DNA from: Chlorokybus atmophyticus
Lineage: Eukaryota > Plantae > Mesostigma and Chlorokybus algae
Assembly (NCBI GenBank): GCA_009103225.1
Contig: RHPI01000975.1
Location: 1 to 53,449 of the forward strand
DNA: 53,449 nt
Direction of reading: 5' to 3'
The notes under the pieces were generated by a model, which did not search any database, was not told the origin of the DNA, and saw nothing but the letters and a program-made list of their open reading frames with translations. The position numbers and the translations under genes were made by a program. The stretch's first letter is position 1. The number at the start of each line of letters is the position of its first letter. Shown one piece after another: positions 4,414 through 51,970 of the stretch.

Positions 4414-5184
4414 NNNNNNNNNNNNNNNNNNNNNNNNNNNNNNNNNNNNNNNNNNNNNNNNNNNNNNNNNNNNNNNNNNNNNNNNNNNNNNNNNNNNNNN
4501 NNNNNNNNNNNNNNNNNNNNNNNNNNNNNNNNNNNNNNNNNNNNNNNNNNNNNNNNNNNNNNNNNNNNNNNNNNNNNNNNNNNNNNNNNNNNNNNNNNNN
4601 NNNNNNNNNNNNNNNNNNNNNNNNNNNNNNNNNNNNNNNNNNNNNNNNNNNNNNNNNNNNNNNNNNNNNNNNNNNNNNNNNNNNNNNNNNNNNNNNNNNN
4701 NNNNNNNNNNNNNNNNNNNNNNNNNNNNNNNNNNNNNNNNNNNNNNNNNNNNNNNNNNNNNNNNNNNNNNNNNNNNNNNNNNNNNNNNNNNNNNNNNNNN
4801 NNNNNNNNNNNNNNNNNNNNNNNNNNNNNNNNNNNNNNNNNNNNNNNNNNNNNNNNNNNNNNNNNNNNNNNNNNNNNNNNNNNNNNNNNNNNNNNNNNNN
4901 NNNNNNNNNNNNNNNNNNNNNNNNNNNNNNNNNNNNNNNNNNNNNNNNNNNNNNNNNNNNNNNNNNNNNNNNNNNNNNNNNNNNNNNNNNNNNNNNNNNN
5001 NNNNNNNNNNNNNNNNNNNNNNNNNNNNNNNNNNNNNNNNNNNNNNNNNNNNNNNNNNNNNNNNNNNNNNNNNNNNNNNNNNNNNNNNNNNNNNNNNNNN
5101 NNNNNNNNNNNNNNNNNNNNNNNNNNNNNNNNNNNNNNNNNNNNNNNNNNNNNNNNNNNNNNNNNNNNNNNNNNNNNNNNNNNN
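4414..5184. other. Assembly gap (N run), flanked by a near-identical 17-19 nt duplication
   Basis: Left flank ttcaacacagtcccccc; right flank ttcaacacagttccccccc. Confidence 0.95.
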
Positions 5185-7964: not shown

Positions 7965-8414
7965 NNNNNNNNNNNNNNNNNNNNNNNNNNNNNNNNNNNN
8001 NNNNNNNNNNNNNNNNNNNNNNNNNNNNNNNNNNNNNNNNNNNNNNNNNNNNNNNNNNNNNNNNNNNNNNNNNNNNNNNNNNNNNNNNNNNNNNNNNNNN
8101 NNNNNNNNNNNNNNNNNNNNNNNNNNNNNNNNNNNNNNNNNNNNNNNNNNNNNNNNNNNNNNNNNNNNNNNNNNNNNNNNNNNNNNNNNNNNNNNNNNNN
8201 NNNNNNNNNNNNNNNNNNNNNNNNNNNNNNNNNNNNNNNNNNNNNNNNNNNNNNNNNNNNNNNNNNNNNNNNNNNNNNNNNNNNNNNNNNNNNNNNNNNN
8301 NNNNNNNNNNNNNNNNNNNNNNNNNNNNNNNNNNNNNNNNNNNNNNNNNNNNNNNNNNNNNNNNNNNNNNNNNNNNNNNNNNNNNNNNNNNNNNNNNNNN
8401 NNNNNNNNNNNNNN
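7965..8414. other. Assembly gap bounded by G runs
   Basis: N run with poly-G on both sides. Confidence 0.98.
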
Positions 8415-9716
8415 GGGGGGGAGGGCAGCAAGTGGACGGAAAAGTTGTTGAGTAACTGTGTAAATGGTGTCCACGTGCGTGAATACATACTTACAGATAT
8501 TCGTATGCACTAAAGCGTGCGAGTAGTAACAGTTGATGTTGTACGTACTCAAACAACACTCTTGAGTGTGCTTGTCTGAGTACGTGCAACATGCCACATT
8601 CGAACACAAACCCAATACAGATTACACAATTCCGCACTTATACGTGCACGATTGCAATTTACCCACACGCACGCATCATTGCATCTGGGTGATAGTAGGT
8701 AAAACGGTGCATAGCTACTGCGAGTAATGCGGCTGTGCTGTGGTTGCAGTCTTGCAATCAGTTTGCTACAGGCGAAGAAGAGGGCTATTTTGGCATGTGC
8801 GATATTGTTTTCCGGCAGCTGCAACTCAAGGCAAGTGCGCGTGGTGCTCAACTGTATACGGCTGACATACTCGACAAGCCATCGCACTGCAAACGGCTAC
8901 AGCTACATACTGTTTTGCACTCGACTACAGACATGACTTGCGAACATGTGACACTGGAGGTACACGTGTTTGCAATTGATGTTGTTTGAGCCCAGCATTG
9001 TCATTCTGTTCAAGCACATAGGTGCATGCGGGATTGCCTGTGCCTGGGGACGCACGTGCGCACCTGCCCCGCGCATGTTCTTAATTGCACTTGCTGTGTG
9101 AATATGCATTTCTGTGTACGCGCTTGCTTGCTTAAATGCATGCGTGTGCGTGTGCATGTGCATCTGTGCGTGTGCAATTGCATAGTCATGTGTGCGCGTG
9201 CGCGTGTGTGTGTTGTCTCAGGGTTTAGCCACCATGTTGGGCGATGGCATCACCCAGCTCATCACCGACGATGAAGTCCACATTGATCCCACCTTTGCTT
9301 CCACTCCTCACTCCTCTTCGCAGACTCCACCTCTAACACCTCAGCATTGTCATGCTCGTCCTCGCATGTGGCTATCACTGTGGCGGGGCTATGGTCCTTC
9401 CGTCCCGAAGACAACGGCGGCCCGAAGAAGAGACGTACCAGCCTACAGCCGCAGGATGTGGAGAACCGTAGCTGTAGTTGTAAGGTTAGGGTTACATGTG
9501 ACAGATGACAAGTGCAGAAGCTTTGGGATCTACCAGTGAGCTGACCAGTTTAGTGCAGTCAACAATGCCGTGCTGTTGGTTTTGATGGTGGTCAATGCAT
9601 GCATACACGCACACATGCAAGCCTACATGCATGCATGTACGTGCACATACGCACGCCCATGCACAAGGCATTGCTTGCACAATACTCTTGAAGATTTATG
9701 TACACAAAGGCGTGCC

Positions 9717-11386
9717 TTAGAAGTTGTGCAGCGTTGTGCACACGCGAATGCCCAATGTCTCATCTTCATCCACGTCCACGCTTTCCTTGATGCTTGGCGC
9801 ACATACAACACCAAGTAGCGCAGGCTCGCGCACTCCATACTTCGTAAGTATATAACATACAGTGTGAAGCCGGAGTGCTAGCTGCTTCTTGGCAGCATCC
9901 AACTCTGCAACTGGGCATACACCATATCGTCATCGCAAGGCGCACGCAATGAGCAAGGGTGCAAGGTGGGATCTAACATGATGACAAACAATGAATGTGT
10001 TTATCATCATGTCAGATTGTACCCTCGGAGGTGCGCAACAATGACATAACATGGGTTGGGCATGGGCATACCATCTGCATTGTGCTTCACCTCTCCCATC
10101 GTTAACACACGCGAACTTGCGCCCACGAGCCCTGTACAATATGAAGCATGGGATTGTATTACCTCTGTCAATACACTCATAATTACTTCTTTGTCAGTAC
10201 CTCCGCGGATGTTGATCTCAAGCTCTGAAACGCCAGCCATACCCAGTCTCTGACCACAAATATGCGTCACAACTCTGATGCCGGGCCCGGCATCAGCCAC
10301 GATGGCATCTGACGTCCAATGCACATGTCGGTGTTATGCACCCAAGAGTGGTACTTGGCAAGCATGCTGTGGTTTTCTAAAACAAAGTTGAGGCGTACCA
10401 AAGTTGCGACCCAAGACGTAGTTGTAGCGTTGTAGTGTACGCTGCAAGTAACCCGGCAGCAAGAGGTCAACGAGGTTGTAGAAACGCTCTCCTGCTTGTC
10501 TGAGGTCTGCAGTTAACTGACGCCCTTCTGCCTCGCAGCGCAGCCAGTCAGCTGCCTTTTCGAGCTTTACCGTTGCCTTGGGGACTTGTTCCACGTTAAA
10601 GTCCTTCCCGCGCTGGAGCTCCAATTGCCTGGTTGCAGATTGGACGGCTGAACCCACAACAGCTTCAAAACTGGTAAAGAATGCATCCTGGTTACACATG
10701 TTACGCAGCTAATTACTAGCGGCTCAAGCAACAAGCACGGACACAGCACGACTACTGAACTTCACGTACCTTTTCATGCAAGTCTGCCAGCAATGCGGCC
10801 GGACTTGCATCAACGAAATCTGGAGCGTACGTGTGCAGGACGTGTTGGATATTTTGCAAAGTCACACTTGTGCAAAAGACAGATGTAGCTGCGTTGCAGG
10901 GTTCGCGGAGTACGCCTTGAACGTCATCGATGAACCGCGAGCGCGCTAGGCGCTCCACCGTCGAACTCATCGTGGCAATGACATGGCCCTGTTGCTTTGT
11001 GACTAGGATCAAACGTTGGTCGATGCTTTTGATTTCTTTCAGCAGGCTTGCGGAGCGCTTCGCCTCGCGTAAACGCCACAACCGGAAGTACCCCTAGTAC
11101 CACCCTCTATAAGCAGCAGGCAACCTACCGCAGTTTGTCTACGCTGAGCGCTTGCTTGACGGTTTGACGTGCATGCAACCAGCGTGACAATGACAGGTAC
11201 ACGCACCGGCTCCTTTGGTAAACCCACAAGTTCTTCCTCTGACGCTCCAGCAGGCTGGTCACCAAACCGTTCCTGGCCACCAGAGCGGCTGGAGCAAAAC
11301 AACTTGGGTATGACAGCAGCTTGCCGCGTCCAACAACCGAGGCCAGCGAAGCATGCAGCCCTGCTGCTGAGCCGCCGCAACGCCAT
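9717..11386 (-). CDS. Intact 5-exon gene, 405 aa; putative organelle-targeted PD-(D/E)XK-like nuclease-fold protein. Exons 11386-11207, 11093-10770, 10687-10399, 10308-10072, 9904-9717
   Basis: Four GT-AG introns (113, 82, 90, 167 nt) with matching phases join five ORF pieces into a 1218-nt open frame. N-terminus MALRRLSSRAACFAGLG. C-terminal half contains NFDAIVAD...ELEINIRG...GEVKHNADELDAAKKQLALRL. The gene structure is better supported than the function. Confidence 0.8.
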
Positions 11387-11419
11387 CCCTGCATTCCGCT
11401 ACCCCAGCTACCAGGCGGC

Positions 11420-11449
11420 GGCGAAGGCGAAGGCGAAGGCGAAGGCGAA
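11420..11449 (+). repeat. (GGCGAA)5 hexamer microsatellite between two divergent start codons
   Basis: Read directly from the sequence. Confidence 0.9.
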
Positions 11450-11617
11450 CTGGAAATAGACTGCTCTGCGTGACTGGTAATGACGATGTTTGGATATAAC
11501 GTTTAGCACCCGTGCTTAGGATAAGCAGGGTGCTTGCGGCGGCGGAGGTGCGTTTGGTTTTGTTTGTGGTTGTTGTCGTTTCATTGTGGCTGGCCGTTGT
11601 CGCCGTTAGGAAGCAAG

Positions 11618-14285
11618 ATGACCAAGGAGCCAATCCCCCCCCGCGGCGAAGTCCGGGCGGTTCACCGTGTTCCCCATCAACTACCACAAAGTGTGGGAAA
11701 TGCACAACAAGGCAGAGGCTTCTTTCTGGACGGGTAAGAGACAAGCGAGTCTTTTTGGGTGCATGTTCAACTATCTCATTGTTGCGTGATGATAGCACTG
11801 GACAGTCGACGCAGCGCTCAGGGCTTTCAGTGCCACACGCGATTTGTGCCCAGTACATGTGGCATCACATGCAGTTGCTGTGTTCGCCATACATACATAC
11901 ATCATCATATCGTCTGCAACCTCATTGACACAACGTGATCACACAACATGTCGTCGATACTGTTATCATCGTGCTCTTTGCATGCGCACGATGTTCACAA
12001 GCGTTCTCACAGTCACGCCCACCTACTTGCTCACACGCACGCCCATTCATTGTCGCGTTGATGTTTCCAGCTCACAGTCACGCTGACGTCCACGCTCACA
12101 TGTATGCTACGCATGTATGCTTACAAGCACTCCCACATCCTACTCCACATCCGTGCTCACGTGTCTGCTCACATCCATGCTTACAAGCATGCTCCCGTCT
12201 AATCTCACACTTACACTCAAGCCTAAGCGCGCATCCGAGCTCGCAAGCATTCTCACACACATCCGCACTCACATGTAGGTGATGGCAAGCACTGGGACTC
12301 CCTTCCGGATGGTAAGCGCCATTTCGTGTCGCACGTGCTGGCGTTCTGCACAGCGTTGGACGGGGTGGTGCTGGAGAACTTGGGGGTGCGGTTCAGGAAG
12401 GAGGTGCAGATACCAGAGGTGAGAGAGGGGGCAACGTGCACGCGCGCGTGTGTGCAAATGCGCGTGGTTGGGTCTATGTACAGCCTGTATACCAAGTAGA
12501 ATGCATGCGTGTGCACGTGTGCGTCTGAGTTTCTGTGCAGGCACTTTGTGCGTGTGCAGCAGATGTTAACACTGTTGGCTGCGTTGCAGGCGCGCGCGTT
12601 TTATGGCCGAATACATCGAGAGCATACGTTCAAGTACAGTCTGTTATATTTGTGTCAATCAGTCCGACCATGTTTTTCAGTTTCTTTCTTTCTTTTACTG
12701 ACTTGGTTTCAATCTGCGTGCAGAGATGTACAGTCTGCTGACCAACGCGTACATCGAAAATGCAGCTCAGAAGCACCACCCTTTCAGTTCACGCCGTCGA
12801 GAGCATACCCTGCATCAAGAAGGCCCACTGGCCCTCCTGTGGATTGAAACGTGAGCTTGTGTCTGTTCTTGTTTGGTGATTCTCAGTACACAGCACAAGC
12901 TTTAAACAACCTCGCGCCGTTGCAGACAAAGGCAGGCACCCGCACATGCACACGTACGTGTGTGTATACATGCAACACACATATACACACATGCGACACA
13001 CCGACATTCCAGCAACCTTCTGCCTCCTTTTCAGGAGCCAGTCCTTTGCAGAGCGCTTGCTTGCATCGAGGGTATAGTCTTCTCAGGCAGCTACTCTGCG
13101 CGATCTTCTGGCCAAAGTAGCGAGGCCTTATGCTGGGGCTTACCTTCACCAACGAGCTCATCTTGCGGGACGAGGGGCTGCACTGCGACTTTACGTGCTT
13201 GCTCTACTCGTAAGTATTGGTGACTTGGCAGTGGCACGTGGCATGCTGTATGTGTGTACGTGCGTGCGCGTGTACGTTTGCGTGCGCGTGTGAGAGGTGC
13301 GTCTCATCTGTAGATGTGTCTATCTGCGTGCGCACGCACGCAGATGCCCACGCATGCGTAGGCATACATAGTTGTGCTGGCACACAGGTGTGTATACATT
13401 TCAGCACGCGCTTCTGTGTGCGCAGGCACTCGTGTCTGCGGGCATGTGTATTGTATGTGGGCGTTTTGCCACCGATGCTGCCCATTGCATGCTGCTGGTG
13501 AACAAGCTGGAGCAGGCCAAGCTGTTGGCGATCGTGACAAACACAGCGAGGATCGAGAAGGAGTTTGTGTGCAACCGTCGTCGGCATAAGCGACTAAGTC
13601 GAGTTCGTCCCCAACCGCCTCCTGGTGCGTCATAGCTTACACTACACGCGCACACATTCATGTTCGCTCGCACCTGCGCACGTGCACATGACAATGCACT
13701 TGCAGGTGTATGCGGATACATAAGCACGCGGGCATCCGCATGTGTGCGTAATCGTGCATGCGAGCGTGATGATGTATGCATGCGGTCATTCAGAAAGTTG
13801 TGCGCGCACGCATGCGGCATGTGCGTGCGCGCAAATATGCATGCACACGCCATTGTCAACAGGCACTGGCATGAACGCATGCGCATACATGTAGGGTGTC
13901 CATGTATACGTGTGCGTTTGCATGCACAGATGCACAGTGCAGTACACGGTGGGCACTTACCTGTTGATTGTAGGTTGTTGAAGGTTGCATTGGTACAAGA
14001 GAAGCTGCACAACACGCAGAATCCGTTCAACTGGTTCAACATGTGTTGCGCAGGTAAGCCATCATGTGCGCATTTTCGCACACATATGTGTGTGCGTAGG
14101 CGCACACGCGCACATATGCATGCTGCGCACACAAGTGTCAACATATCTGGTCCTGGTCCCAACACCGGGGGCAAGACTAGTTTTCTTGAACAGCGCGTGG
14201 GCGAGTATCAGAAGGCTGTTGTGATGGCGGTCTGGACAAGAACACGTCGCACTCACATGTGTTCACGGCCGCCATGGACTTGTGA
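11618..14285 (+). pseudogene. RNR2: Unprocessed (intron-containing) pseudogene of the ribonucleotide reductase small subunit R2
   Basis: Exon remnants: [25 protein letters not shown]; KHWDSLPDGKRHFVSHVLAF...VLENLGVRFRKEVQIPE; ARAFYG; AVESIPCIKKAHWALLWI; [35 protein letters not shown]; RIEKEFVC; NPFNW; GKTSFLEQRVGEYQKAVVM. In-frame TAG at 13118-13120, several frameshifts, ENIH iron-ligand motif lost. Confidence 0.93.
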
Positions 14286-16012
14286 TTGTGTATGCGTGCA
14301 AGCTCAAGTAATATATATATAGAGAGAGAGATGTCGTTTGTACTTCAGTGGCACATACTGTGCATGCATGGTGCGTTAGGGTTCAAGCGAATGGTGGCCT
14401 TCTTTCAGGTACCAAACAGAGATAGCTTGTGGGGCGCACGGAAAGGCAACGCGAAAACAACACCAAAGGTCACGTGAGATGCTCTTGAACAATACAGGTG
14501 TTGAATATTGGTACTCGATTGCGCATGCTTGGATCTCAGGCTATGTTGGGGGCAGTCATGGCATCGTGCAATTCAGAGTTGCTCAGTCCACATGCGCATG
14601 CATGCTTGCATAAGTGCAACTTTTGGTTTGACTGCCAATCCTAGTGCACAGCGGCATGTGGGAAGCGGGCAGTGGGCAGTGGTGCTGAAATTGCAGGTTT
14701 CGACACCACACAATTGAACATTGCAGATTTAGGCACCACATCCTATGTGGCATTGTTGTCGTTGTTGCTGCGGCGGCGGCGGTTGTGGTGGTAATGCGCG
14801 GAATTGTGTGCGTACATAAGATGACCAGGTAACATGTCTAGCACATGCATAAAGAATGTATTCCTTGCAAAAATCTATCGCTTGACTCTTTGAAAAGAGA
14901 ACGCAAAGTTGTGATCACATATGTGCATTTCCGCAACTCCTCATCTTTGACGCAAGTGAGCAGCCTGCTGTGTACAAAAAATGCAAGTAATGTATGTGCG
15001 ATATATGCAATGCTGTGTATGTGTGTGTTGCTATGCTTGCATGCCATGCCTAATACCATTCCAAGGCATGGTATGCACGGGCAATTGCACCTCGCACTCT
15101 TTGTACAGTGCTCACCATGTATCAATGTGTTGGAACCCATCAAGCAGGCATTGTAAAGCAAATGCATATTATACATGCGTATTGTGCCTCTTAATATCAG
15201 TCTGTCCACTCACTTGTAACCGAGCATACCAAAACTAAGTAACTTAATATATATATCCAAAAACTACATAAATACTTGTTAACTAGCACGAATTGCCTTG
15301 TGCAATCATACGAGTGAGTTATGACACGGGAGGGCTTACACTTTGGGCTGCCCCCATGCTTTAGATTGAAAGTTTAATGCAAATTTGCTGAATAAGAGGG
15401 CTTTCGCTCGAAATTGCCCCCATGCTCTGGCTTGGTGTGGTGGTAGACAGTGCACAGCTCGCACTTACAATCTCTGACAATAACAACAAACACCTCACGT
15501 CCTGCTGATTCCGTAATAATAATAACAATCGTTGTTGTTGCTTAATCATTGATCATAAGATGAATAAGCAGCAACAAGCAACATATACAAAACATCTATC
15601 GCATCTATCGCTAACCACATTCTGATTACCTCGTCCTATATGAGGTGACGATCACCCATATATTATTCCTCAACCAATCTATCCTTTAATACTTGCAGAG
15701 TTTCAACGATTGCCATAGTTGTTTGAGCCATGCCTTTTGCAACCATTCAAGCGAGACAGGACTTTGAGACAGCAGATCCAGTCTCAAGGAGCACAACTAT
15801 GATAGCTGCCTTTATCCATTGAGCTGGATGCCTACGCATTTAGCTATCCCGTCGTAAAATGTTTCCCGTGCCGGCCGTCTAAATAGTGGCAACGGACGTG
15901 CACCTGAAGATACTTATTTAGACTATCGTGGCTTAGTCCACCTGTGATCTTTATACAGAGACCTGAGTATAACTTCCGTTACTATTAGGCCCTTCCCGTT
16001 ACTAGTCAGTCT

Positions 16013-38518: not shown

Positions 38519-41500
38519 ATGGCGGCGGCGGTGGTGGCAGCGGTCCTAGTGTTGACTGCGCTGGGTGGACATGCCCATCTCAGCGCTGCTGAAGGCACAG
38601 GTCTCACTGACGAGGTAGGACAGGAGAACAGGCAGGTTGGAGCTGTACTTACTGCTTGTAATGTGTTTATGGTGGGAGCTTGCTTGATTGCTTGCTTGCA
38701 GACATTGCAACTGCTTCATCATGCTGTTGACATTGTGACAGGTGTAGAATGGCGCAATTCAGGTCGTTGATGTGCTTTCAGTAGCGTCAGTGTGCACAGC
38801 GGCAGCATGCATTGCATATACGCATGGTGCAGGACACTGTGCATGCTTGTCTTTGCGGTCTTGAGGAAGTGCTGACAGCTGCGTATGCAATGCGTTGCTA
38901 AGAATCTTTTTTGGAAGTCGTCAATGAAGAACGTGCACTGTGTGGTTACTTTCAAGGACACAACAGTCCTGCAGCCTGTGCTGTGCATGCTCATATAGGT
39001 GCTCAAGACTGAGCAGGACTTGCTTGGTCCAATCATGCCTATTGAGTCGACAACCATAGGTGATAACAGCAAACAACTTTAATGCAAAGTTAGCACAAGG
39101 CTGTGTGCCCGTTGGTTTGCAAGAACTTAATATCACGTGCATTCACTGCTTGCTTCCTTTCTCCTGGGGTTGGTCGGGGGAGGTGCTGCCTGCTCACNNN
39201 NNNNNNNNNNNNNNNNNNNNNNNNNNNNNNNNNNNNNNNNNNNNNNNNNNNNNNNNNNNNNNNNNNNNNNNNNNNNNNNNNNNNNNNNNNNNNNNNNNNN
39301 NNNNNNNNNNNNNNNNNNNNNNNNNNNNNNNNNNNNNNNNNNNNNNNNNNNNNNNNNNNNNNNNNNNNNNNNNNNNNNNNNNNNNNNNNNNNNNNNNNNN
39401 NNNNNNNNNNNNNNNNNNNNNNNNNNNNNNNNNNNNNNNNNNNNNNNNNNNNNNNNNNNNNNNNNNNNNNNNNNNNNNNNNNNNNNNNNNNNNNNNNNNN
39501 NNNNNNNNNNNNNNNNNNNNNNNNNNNNNNNNNNNNNNNNNNNNNNNNNNNNNNNNNNNNNNNNNNNNNNNNNNNNNNNNNNNNNNNNNNNNNNNNNNNN
39601 NNNNNNNNNNNNNNNNNNNNNNNNNNNNNNNNNNNNNNNNNNNNNNNNNNNNNNNNNNNNNNNNNNNNNNNNNNNNNNNNNNNNNNNNNNNNNNNNNNNN
39701 NNNNNNNNNNNNNNNNNNNNNNNNNNNNNNNNNNNNNNNNNNNNNNNNNNNNNNNNNNNNNNNNNNNNNNNNNNNNNNNNNNNNNNNNNNNNNNNNNNNN
39801 NNNNNNNNNNNNNNNNNNNNNNNNNNNNNNNNNNNNNNNNNNNNNNNNNNNNNNNNNNNNNNNNNNNNNNNNNNNNNNNNNNNNNNNNNNNNNNNNNNNN
39901 NNNNNNNNNNNNNNNNNNNNNNNNNNNNNNNNNNNNNNNNNNNNNNNGGGGGGGAGGCTCTATGAAGAGCACACACATGCAATCATGTACGCGCGCACGC
40001 ACATGCCATGTGTGCATTCATTCCCACACTGATGAAGTGGATGACTGCAGCCCGGGTCCAAGTACACGCCTTACGTGCGCTCGCTGCCAGCAACGTTGAA
40101 CCTGCCCTTGGTGTGGACGGACGCGGAGCTGGCCGAGCTGCAAGGCACTCGGCTTCTGGACTACACGCTGCAGCAGCGTGACGCTGTACGCGCCGAGTAT
40201 GACAACACTTTGAAGCCATTGGTTGAGGTGCGTCTTGATGTTGATTGGAACCTCTTAACACTGTGTTGGAAGCTCGACAAACATCAGCAAAGCCGTTCTT
40301 AGATCATGCATGACTTAAGGCAACTAGTATTTAACACAACACTACAGGGGGATCCGGCGCGGTTCCCTCCAGAAGCCTTCTCCCTTGAGGAGTTCACATG
40401 GGCCGTGGGCACCGTGTTGTCTCGCAGCTTCGTGTTCACTGTTGACGGCTCTGCGGTCCCTTTCATGGTACCTGTTGGAGATCTTTTCAACCACAACAAC
40501 GTCCGCACTGAGGTGTGGCAATCCTCACACCGACCGATATAGCAACTTATAGTGTACATGACAGAAGGTGTAGTGTAGAGCGAGTTGCACACATCAGCAG
40601 CAGCTCATTCTTTGATGCATGCAGACTGTTGCGGATGTCGACAACGGGCGCTTCACAATCCGCATGATGCAAGAAGTGCCAGCTGGCCAGCAGGTAAGAG
40701 TTTATGTGTACACTTGTGCACTGAAGGTGTATGCAACCTATCTATGGGCACACCAAGCATGGCATCACATTGGCAGCGTTGCTACCACAGCAAATGACGT
40801 TGCAATGTGTTGTACAGCAACGATTTATAACAGTCACCAATGCTAAGTTGGTACTCTGAACTGCCGCAGGTGTTTGTCAATTTAGGCGCGAAGTCAAACT
40901 TTGCCCTCATGGCAAACATGGGCTTCGCTTTGCCCGACAATGCTTTCGACTCGGTCTCCTTCGTTGTCCAGGTCACATGAGAAGCAACACGCATGTGCTT
41001 TTGTTTGTTTGTTTGCAACCTGGATCACACCTATTGACTTGTTATTACTATACATAGGTGGATGCAAAGGATCCCTTTCAACCCCTCCGCACGCACATGC
41101 TGGAGGCGTTGGGTGCACCAGCAGATGGCAGGTTCAACATCAGGTACTGGGCGCAATCGTTGGCCTTGCATGTACAGTTGTGGCATGCAGGATATTGCTG
41201 TACTATTGTTGTATGCAATGTGCACCTCTCACGCACCATGTTGGTGTGATGTGCAGGAAAGGGGACTCTTTGATGCCTCTTATGCAGGCCCTCCGCGTAC
41301 AAGTTATGAAGCCATCCGAGTTTGACAAGTTTGAAGTAGGCCACTTTGCTGAGTTGTGTAATACTCTATCTAACAACCCTGCTTGTATCCTCCCTGCACG
41401 ACACCGTGCACTCGTGCTGTGGTTGTTTTATCCCAAGAGAATAAACCTTACCAGCTTTTAAAAATCTCTTCTTGTTGTACACTCACCAGACTGTGTGCAC

Positions 41501-51962: not shown

Positions 51963-51970
51963 NNNNNNNN

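What the first reader, a model, noticed from the sequence alone, without database searches (positions are those of the whole stretch)
9717..11386. Intact gene for a putative organelle-targeted restriction-like (PD-(D/E)XK) nuclease
Seen: five ORF fragments that look unrelated in the six-frame track splice, through four canonical GT-AG introns with matching phases, into one 405-aa open frame. The N-terminus is Arg/Ser/Ala-rich and lacks acidic residues for ~37 aa (MALRRLSSRAACFAGLG...). The C-terminal part has acidic strand motifs (FDAIVAD, ELEINIRG), then GEVK, then a helix with AKKQL. Known: a D...(D/E)xK core followed by an A..QL helix is typical of PD-(D/E)XK nucleases. Inferred: a nuclear-encoded nuclease or nucleic-acid-binding pseudo-nuclease imported into mitochondria or plastids. 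I cannot assign it to a named family.
Basis: partly seen in the sequence, partly recalled or inferred. Interest (0 to 1): 0.7.

Follow-up and report, generated by a model that had tools for sequence, protein, structure and literature searches.

The report
Expressed orphan gene, possible organellar nuclease
This is a real, transcribed and spliced gene of the streptophyte alga Chlorokybus that encodes a 384-residue protein with no detectable relatives anywhere; its start looks like an organelle import signal, and its end may be a restriction-enzyme-like nuclease domain, but that idea rests on weak evidence only.

Summary
The gene is real. The protein is therefore 384 aa, not 405. It is identical to a stored public model, Chlat1 6109 of Chlorokybus atmophyticus.

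No relatives were found by any method: the exhaustive search with exon 3, the word searches, four HMM libraries, PDB sequences, and scans of metagenome, prokaryote, virus, plasmid and phage collections.

The N-terminus has no acidic residue in its first 38 aa and carries Arg at positions 4, 5 and 9. This looks like a presequence, more mitochondrial than plastid, but no predictor was available.

The nuclease reading could not be tested by fold. AlphaFold2 without an alignment gave pLDDT 34-36. The support is weak:
- For residues 235-384, the ten nearest named clusters by language-model features are all NERD/Mrr/PDDEXK families, at sub-threshold scores of 0.83-0.87.
- The D...ExK...Q string occurs in 2-6% of shuffles.

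Verdict: an ordinary lineage-restricted gene with an unproven nuclease-like C-terminus (fold about 0.45). Interest is modest.

The parts
11207..11386 (-). Coding exon 1 (aa 1-60). It begins at ATG 11386-11384. Residues 1-38 (11386-11273) form the acid-free, Arg/Ser/Ala-rich presequence-like stretch.
   Evidence: Covered by the X1 contig. P0001 residues 1-60.
11094..11206 (-). Intron 1, 113 nt, GTGCGT..TACTAG, phase 0
   Evidence: Skipped in the X1 contig.
10770..11093 (-). Coding exon 2 (aa 61-168)
10688..10769 (-). Intron 2, 82 nt, GTACGT..AACCAG, phase 0
10399..10687 (-). Coding exon 3 (aa 169-264 plus the first base of codon 265)
   Evidence: This exon was the query of the exhaustive search.
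10309..10398 (-). Intron 3, 90 nt, GTACGC..CGTCAG, phase 1. It splits the codon of D265.
10201..10308 (-). Coding exon 4 (aa 265-300). Holds FDAIVAD and ELEINIRG.
10132..10200 (-). Intron 4, 69 nt, GTACTG..GTACAG, phase 1. It is in frame and has no stop.
   Evidence: Skipped in the X1 contig. Absent from the public protein P0001.
10072..10131 (-). Coding exon 5 (aa 301-320). Holds GEVK (E313, K315).
9911..10071 (-). Intron 5, 161 nt, GTATGC..GCCCAG, phase 1
9717..9910 (-). Coding exon 6 (aa 321-384 plus stop TAA 9719-9717). Holds the AKKQL helix candidate.
9472..9715 (-). A 244-nt stretch skipped in the X1 contig. It begins two bases after the stop codon and has GC..AG ends on the minus strand. 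It is probably a 3'UTR GC-AG intron; the alternative is an indel between strains.
   Evidence: joint 9471/9716, ends CT..GC on the + strand; sequence read.
9220..9471 (-). Distal 3'UTR covered by the transcript contig, which ends at 9220
   Evidence: table 8
11387..11617 (.). A 231-bp spacer shared with the divergent ribonucleotide reductase small-chain gene (ATG 11618, + strand). It holds a (GGCGAA)5 run at 11420-11449. It is presumably a bidirectional promoter with overlapping 5' ends.

Best explanation
Shown: this is a nuclear gene of Chlorokybus atmophyticus (public model Chlat1 6109). It has six coding exons and is transcribed and spliced into an mRNA for a 384-aa protein. The protein has no detectable relative in any collection searched, so the gene is lineage-restricted. 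Inferred: residues 1 to about 38-60 act as a cleavable import presequence. The Arg cluster at the extreme N-terminus favours mitochondria over plastids. The mature protein would consist of a helical N-terminal part (about 61-235) and a C-terminal alpha/beta domain (about 235-384). That domain most likely has a restriction-endonuclease-like (PD-(D/E)XK; NERD/Mrr-like) fold. In that reading D265 (strand FDAIVAD) and E313-x-K315 (strand TMGEVK) would hold the divalent metal, and the following helix (AAKKQL) would lie along the substrate. The protein would then bind or cut organellar DNA or RNA. If the strand right after FDAIVAD (GIRVVTHI) is the true third core strand, the canonical E-x-K position is occupied by T-H-I. 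The domain would then be a non-catalytic binder. Confidence by layer: real expressed gene of 384 aa, 0.95; lineage-restricted, 0.8; organelle import, about 0.6; PD-(D/E)XK-like fold, about 0.45. The figure given below is for the fold and mechanism claim.
For: Gene model: all five coding introns are skipped in the spliced X1 contig. The six-exon translation equals stored protein P0001, which carries the source name eukprot jgi/Chlat1/6109. Constraint: X1 differs from the window at 3 of 1155 coding bases but at 8 of 483 flanking UTR and spacer bases, Fisher p = 0.004. Presequence: there is no D/E in the first 38 aa, 6 R/K, and Arg at 4, 5 and 9. Fold: for residues 235-384, the ten best named clusters by language-model features are all PD-(D/E)XK-clan families. 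These are NERD x3, Mrr_cat, PDDEXK_3, MunI, Card1 and Mrr_cat_2, at 0.83-0.87. A NERD cluster also appears at rank 11 for the whole protein. A strand-like D motif followed by a strand-like ExK occurs in 6.4% of shuffles; with a following Q-hydrophobic pair it occurs in 1.9%. These elements match the order of the defining core (D in strand 2, ExK in strand 3, a basic second helix) as described in PMC3424549. Context: the gene lies head to head, 231 bp away, with the ribonucleotide reductase small-chain gene, which is a DNA-metabolism gene. This is weak support.
Against: No profile or sequence method sees a PD-(D/E)XK family. Pfam, NCBIfam, PADLOC and PHROGs gave nothing at E up to 10, and PDB phmmer gave nothing. 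The atlas scores are below the tool's 0.9 line, and the shared features (88-112 of 256) are in the range the tool gives for chance hits or distant relatives. The tool also says a third of shuffled proteins get ten hits of one clan. D265 and E313 are 47 residues apart, which is long for the core hairpin and needs an insertion. The motif test was defined after seeing the motif. AlphaFold2 gave no usable model (pLDDT 34.3 and 36.3), and Foldseek on it found nothing, so the fold is untested. Targeting rests on composition only. An out-of-frame ATG sits 8 nt upstream of the start (11394).
Confidence: 0.45

Rival explanations
1. The protein is lineage-specific and has a fold unrelated to restriction endonucleases. 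The D...ExK...Q strings and the language-model neighbours are coincidence, and its function, organellar or not, has nothing to do with cutting nucleic acid.
For: No match in any HMM library or in PDB sequences. Atlas scores are below 0.9 with low shared-feature counts, a pattern the tool says chance hits also give. D265 and E313 are unusually far apart. The low-confidence AlphaFold2 model of the whole protein is all-helical.
Against: PD-(D/E)XK families are known for escaping sequence methods (PMC3424549).
Confidence: 0.4
2. The protein stays in the cytosol or nucleus, and the basic N-terminus is not an import signal. This rival concerns location only and is compatible with either fold reading.
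For: No targeting predictor could be run. The hydrophobic moment of the first 18 residues is modest at 0.33. The X1 strain has G36D inside the proposed presequence. An out-of-frame ATG 8 nt upstream and an unknown transcription start leave the true N-terminus unverified.
Against: 38 residues without D/E, with Arg at 4, 5 and 9 and many Ser/Ala, is the usual look of plant and algal mitochondrial presequences (own knowledge).
Confidence: 0.35
3. It is not a functional protein-coding gene. The transcript would be non-coding or an annotation artefact, and the long frame would be accidental.
For: No homologue supports the frame. Only three coding differences are seen against X1, two of them non-synonymous.
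Against: A 1155-nt frame stays open across five precisely spliced introns with matching phases. The coding part is about six times less diverged than the flanks, p = 0.004. An independent public annotation gives the same 384-aa product. The language-model recognition value of 2319 is just above the level that 91% of known-family proteins reach.
Confidence: 0.04

Closest known systems
NERD (nuclease-related domain, Pfam PF08378), a PD-(D/E)XK-clan family of bacteria, archaea and their viruses
   Same: These are the nearest named clusters by language-model features for residues 235-384 (ranks 1-3, 0.86-0.87). The order of elements is the same: a helix with acidic residues, a hydrophobic strand with D, a later hydrophobic strand with ExK, then a basic helix.
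   Different: There is no Pfam match even at E 10. The strand directly after the D strand carries T-H-I where NERD would have E-x-K (my reading, from memory of the family). The candidate ExK lies 47 residues after D265. The host is eukaryotic, the gene has introns, and the protein has an N-terminal presequence and a roughly 175-aa helical region.
Mrr-type restriction endonuclease catalytic domain (Pfam PF04471 Mrr_cat, PF13156 Mrr_cat_2)
   Same: Language-model neighbours at ranks 4, 5 and 21 (0.83-0.85). The D ... (E/Q)xK core is followed by a helix and a buried hydrophobic strand (ALLGVVCAP here).
   Different: There is no profile match, no winged-helix DNA-binding N-domain was detected, and there is no restriction-modification context.
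RAP-domain and OPR/FASTK-type organellar RNA-processing proteins of green algae, plants and apicomplexans (Pfam PF08373; PMC8190603, listed by the paper search)
   Same: The proposed logic is the same: nuclear-encoded and imported into an organelle, with a helical N-terminal part followed by a small C-terminal domain. That the RAP domain has a restriction-endonuclease-like fold is my own knowledge, as is its action on organellar nucleic acid; I did not read it in the paper here.
   Different: There is no RAP, OPR or FAST profile match. RAP proteins are widespread, while this protein has no relatives at all.
Lineage-restricted (orphan) genes in general
   Same: No homologue in 1.84 billion representatives for exon 3 or in the 5.8 billion-cluster word index for the whole protein. 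The gene has a single copy in the window.
   Different: It is well spliced, constrained relative to its flanks, and has a recognisable targeting-like N-terminus. It therefore looks like an established gene rather than a marginal de novo ORF.

Membership tests
PD-(D/E)XK phosphodiesterase superfamily (restriction endonuclease-like fold) | [quoted passage not shown] | tested here: inconclusive
   AlphaFold2 without an alignment gave pLDDT 34.3 for the whole protein and 36.3 for residues 222-384. Foldseek against PDB with the latter found no match at E <= 0.001. The low-confidence domain model does show helix, two strands (266-272, 275-282), a helix (321-344) and a last strand (376-383).
PD-(D/E)XK phosphodiesterase superfamily (restriction endonuclease-like fold) | Asp at the start of core strand 2 and (D/E)xK in core strand 3, often with an acidic residue in helix 1 | tested here: inconclusive
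   Candidate residues exist: D265, E313-V-K315, and E235 in the preceding helix. The D-to-E distance is 47 residues. The pattern occurs in 6.4% of shuffles, or 1.9% with the Q helix. Whether the residues sit on the right strands cannot be told without a structure.
PD-(D/E)XK phosphodiesterase superfamily (restriction endonuclease-like fold) | Significant profile similarity to at least one family of the clan | tested here: not met
   Pfam, NCBIfam, PADLOC and PHROGs gave no clan family at E up to 10 for the whole protein or for residues 230/235-384. PDB phmmer gave none. Only language-model neighbours at 0.83-0.87 point there.
PD-(D/E)XK phosphodiesterase superfamily (restriction endonuclease-like fold) | Divalent-metal-dependent cleavage of DNA or RNA | not testable with these tools
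   This needs a biochemical assay.
NERD domain (PF08378) | Score above the Pfam gathering threshold | tested here: not met
   No hit at E up to 10. The atlas neighbours are leads only.
RAP domain organellar proteins (PF08373) | RAP profile match at the C-terminus, usually after OPR/FAST helical repeats | tested here: not met
   No hit.
Organelle-imported proteins with a cleavable N-terminal presequence | N-terminus free of acidic residues and rich in Arg, Ser and Ala | tested here: met
   The first D/E is at residue 39. The first 37 aa hold 6 R/K, 6 S/T and 6 A, with Arg at 4, 5 and 9.
Organelle-imported proteins with a cleavable N-terminal presequence | Positive call by a trained predictor, or experimental localisation | not testable with these tools
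   No TargetP, DeepLoc or PredAlgo is available here.

The most novel reading that the evidence does not exclude
The C-terminal 150 residues found a new, sequence-isolated family of PD-(D/E)XK nucleases that exists only in Chlorokybus (or Chlorokybophyceae) and is imported into mitochondria. It would be an organellar nuclease invented or captured in one of the streptophyte lineages most distant from land plants. Its origin could be a prokaryotic or viral NERD/Mrr-like gene that has since gained five introns and a presequence.
Probability: 0.25. Interest if true: 0.5.

Novelty: new member of a known kind. Interest (0 to 1): 0.3.

Why it matters
If the nuclease reading holds, this would be a lineage-private organellar nucleic-acid enzyme in one of the streptophyte lineages most distant from land plants. 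It would show how a restriction-enzyme-like domain can be recruited into organelle genome or RNA maintenance, possibly after horizontal transfer. If it does not hold, this is one more expressed orphan gene, of which algal genomes hold many. The practical lesson is that an in-frame, stop-free 69-nt intron can only be seen with transcript data, and it changes the spacing of the proposed catalytic motifs.

Tried and rejected
1. P0002, a 3816-aa protein, matched exon 3 at E 3e-18 in the exhaustive search. I rejected it. It consists of about 12 near-identical repeats, each giving a weak 20-23% match, so the summed score is inflated. The best single BLASTP alignment has E 0.046 in a two-sequence search, and its Pfam hits are repeat artefacts.
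2. Weak per-exon or per-part hits were rejected because all lie below the curated cut-offs and outside plausible registers. They are DUF7903 (E 0.1), NuBaID_C (0.14), CarS-like (0.11), a glutathione S-transferase chain (0.46), phrog_11230 (0.22) and phage Dec Gp45 (0.88).
4. AlphaFold2 on the whole protein and on residues 222-384, without an alignment, gave unusable models. Foldseek on the second gave noise only. I did not run the other fold libraries on such models.
5. The exact-protein look-up of contigs found nothing on record.
6. Pattern scans of metagenome, prokaryotic-genome and viral contigs gave no confirmed relative, and tblastn against plasmids and phages gave only chance-level rows.
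7. I considered building my own NERD/Mrr profiles for hhalign. I dropped the idea because a single-sequence query against ad hoc profiles cannot outperform the Pfam models already tried.
8. A paper search for the gene id found nothing.

No typed joined sequence was sent to any tool. The joined translation was built only inside scripts, to check length and frame. Whole-protein searches used P0001, the stored protein returned.

Full report
**Observation and gene model.** The finding lies on the minus strand. These introns are 11206-11094, 10769-10688, 10398-10309 and 10071-9911. A sixth-exon alternative removes a further GT..AG stretch, 10200-10132. That stretch is 69 nt long, a multiple of three and free of stops, so sequence alone cannot decide. 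The alternative model gives 384 aa.

**Transcript evidence.** That share is about what exons alone would give. Laying its contigs on 9200-12400 showed one 1911-nt contig, 95-99% identical to the window. It skips exactly the four predicted introns and also the 69-nt one. In addition it skips 9715-9472, which has GC..AG ends on the minus strand and starts two bases after the stop codon. This is a likely 3'UTR GC-AG intron, or otherwise a strain indel.

The run is only guessed to be RNA. However, a contig that lacks six stretches with splice-site ends must derive from cDNA. The contig continues across the 231-bp spacer into the spliced first exons of the divergent neighbour. It therefore shows overlapping or adjacent transcripts, not one molecule. 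Because the data are contigs, they cannot show a minor isoform.

**Identity.**
- Pfam on the five pieces gave nothing significant.
- The word search with exon 2 gave nothing.
- The exhaustive HMMER search with exon 3 against 1.84 billion representatives returned two proteins.

The first, P0001, has 384 aa and is 100% identical over residues 169-264. A script showed that it equals my six-exon translation residue for residue. The word search named its source as eukprot jgi/Chlat1/6109/Chrsp402S05651. That is the public gene set of Chlorokybus atmophyticus, a streptophyte alga of the class Chlorokybophyceae (genome paper PMC7027972). The gene model is therefore already public, but without a function.

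The second hit, P0002, is a 3816-aa protein of about twelve near-identical repeats. Each repeat matches at 20-23% identity and the summed score is inflated. The best single BLASTP alignment has E 0.046 for a two-sequence comparison, so I reject it.

**Relatives.** None were found.
- The whole protein found only itself in the word index of 5.8 billion clusters, with the 8000 best candidates scored.
- Residues 235-384 alone found only the same protein.
- Pfam, NCBIfam, PADLOC and PHROGs found nothing at E up to 10, for the whole protein or its parts.
- PDB sequences gave nothing.
- Pattern scans of JGI metagenomes, 185,579 prokaryotic genomes and IMG/VR gave no confirmed relative.
- tblastn against plasmids and phages gave only chance-level rows.
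- tblastn of P0001 against the window found no second copy.
- The exact protein is not on record in the contig index.

There is one limit. The exhaustive search covered exon 3 only. For residues 265-384, the absence of relatives rests on the less sensitive methods.

**Is it under constraint?** X1 differs from the window at three coding positions out of 1155. The changes are I81 (silent), S112A and G36D. It differs at eight positions out of 483 bases of 3'UTR and spacer, plus an 11-nt insertion. Fisher's test gives p = 0.004. There are too few changes for a dN/dS estimate, but the coding part is clearly better conserved than its flanks.

**N-terminus.** The first acidic residue is E39. The first 37 residues hold 6 R/K, 6 S/T and 6 A, with Arg at 4, 5 and 9. 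From general knowledge of plant and algal presequences, an Arg cluster at the very start favours mitochondria over plastids. No predictor was available, so this remains an inference. An out-of-frame ATG lies 8 nt upstream at 11394, and the transcription start is unknown.

Removing the 69-nt intron brings ELEINIRG and GEVK 23 residues closer together. Even so, D265 and E313 remain 47 residues apart. The codon of D265 is split by intron 3. A pattern of a strand-like D followed by a strand-like ExK occurs in 6.4% of shuffles of the protein. With a following Q it occurs in 1.9%. The pattern was defined after the fact.

AlphaFold2 without an alignment failed. The whole protein gave pLDDT 34.3 as an all-helix model. 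Residues 222-384 gave 36.3. Foldseek on the latter gave nothing below E 1.

The only positive signal comes from language-model features. For residues 235-384 the ten best named clusters all belong to PD-(D/E)XK-clan families: NERD three times, Mrr_cat, PDDEXK_3, MunI, Card1 endonuclease and Mrr_cat_2. Their scores are 0.83-0.87, with 88-112 of 256 shared features. For the whole protein a NERD cluster appears at rank 11 with 0.80. By the tool's own calibration, scores under 0.9 are leads only. Low shared counts fit chance hits or distant relatives, and a third of shuffled proteins also get ten hits of one clan.

I put the fold at about 0.45. If the strand just after FDAIVAD (GIRVVTHI) is core strand 3, as the spacing in NERD-like domains would suggest (from memory, a lead only), the ExK position holds T-H-I. 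The domain would then be catalytically degenerate.

**Context.** The neighbour 231 bp upstream on the other strand is the ribonucleotide reductase small chain. Pfam PF00268 matches its first two exons at E 1.9e-5 and 9.5e-10. A shared promoter with a DNA-precursor gene fits a nucleic-acid role loosely, but it proves nothing.

**Verdict.** This is a real, expressed, lineage-restricted gene whose model needed one correction. Its N-terminus is presequence-like. The restriction-endonuclease-like reading is plausible but unproven, and membership of any named family was tested and not met. Interest is modest. It would rise if orthologue-based structure prediction confirmed the fold.

Noticed in passing
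window 11618-11735 (+ strand): The first exon of the ribonucleotide reductase small-chain gene has a frame problem. The ATG at 11618 is out of frame with the conserved RNR reading frame that starts matching Pfam PF00268 at about 11658. A run of eight C at 11635-11642 lies between them. With seven C the two would form one frame ([22 protein letters not shown]...). This is probably a homopolymer error in the assembly or a polymorphism. The X1 contig has unexplained extra gaps in this piece.
   Followed up: partly
window 11420-11449 and 11534: The spacer between the two divergent genes holds a (GGCGAA)5 microsatellite. The X1 strain has an 11-nt insertion after 11534, so the shared promoter region is polymorphic.
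   Followed up: no
window 11394-11125 (- strand): An out-of-frame ATG lies 8 nt upstream of the gene's start codon and opens an 89-codon overlapping frame. Whether it is in the mRNA depends on the unknown transcription start.
   Followed up: no
window 9472-9715 (- strand): A likely GC-AG intron in the 3'UTR begins two bases after the stop codon. The skipped stretch is rich in CATGCA/CACGCA-type low-complexity repeats, which also fill the first intron of the RNR gene (about 11735-12280) and much of 12500-14300.
   Followed up: partly
window 4414-5184, 7965-8414, 39198-39947, 51963-51970: Assembly gaps (runs of N). The one at 7965-8414 lies about 0.8 kb beyond the 3' end of this gene's transcript.
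   Followed up: no
window 9219-9271: A contig of run X2 matches only these 53 bases, at 90-95% identity, and continues into unlike sequence on both sides. It may be a short repeat or a diverged orthologous 3'UTR in another strain or species.
   Followed up: no
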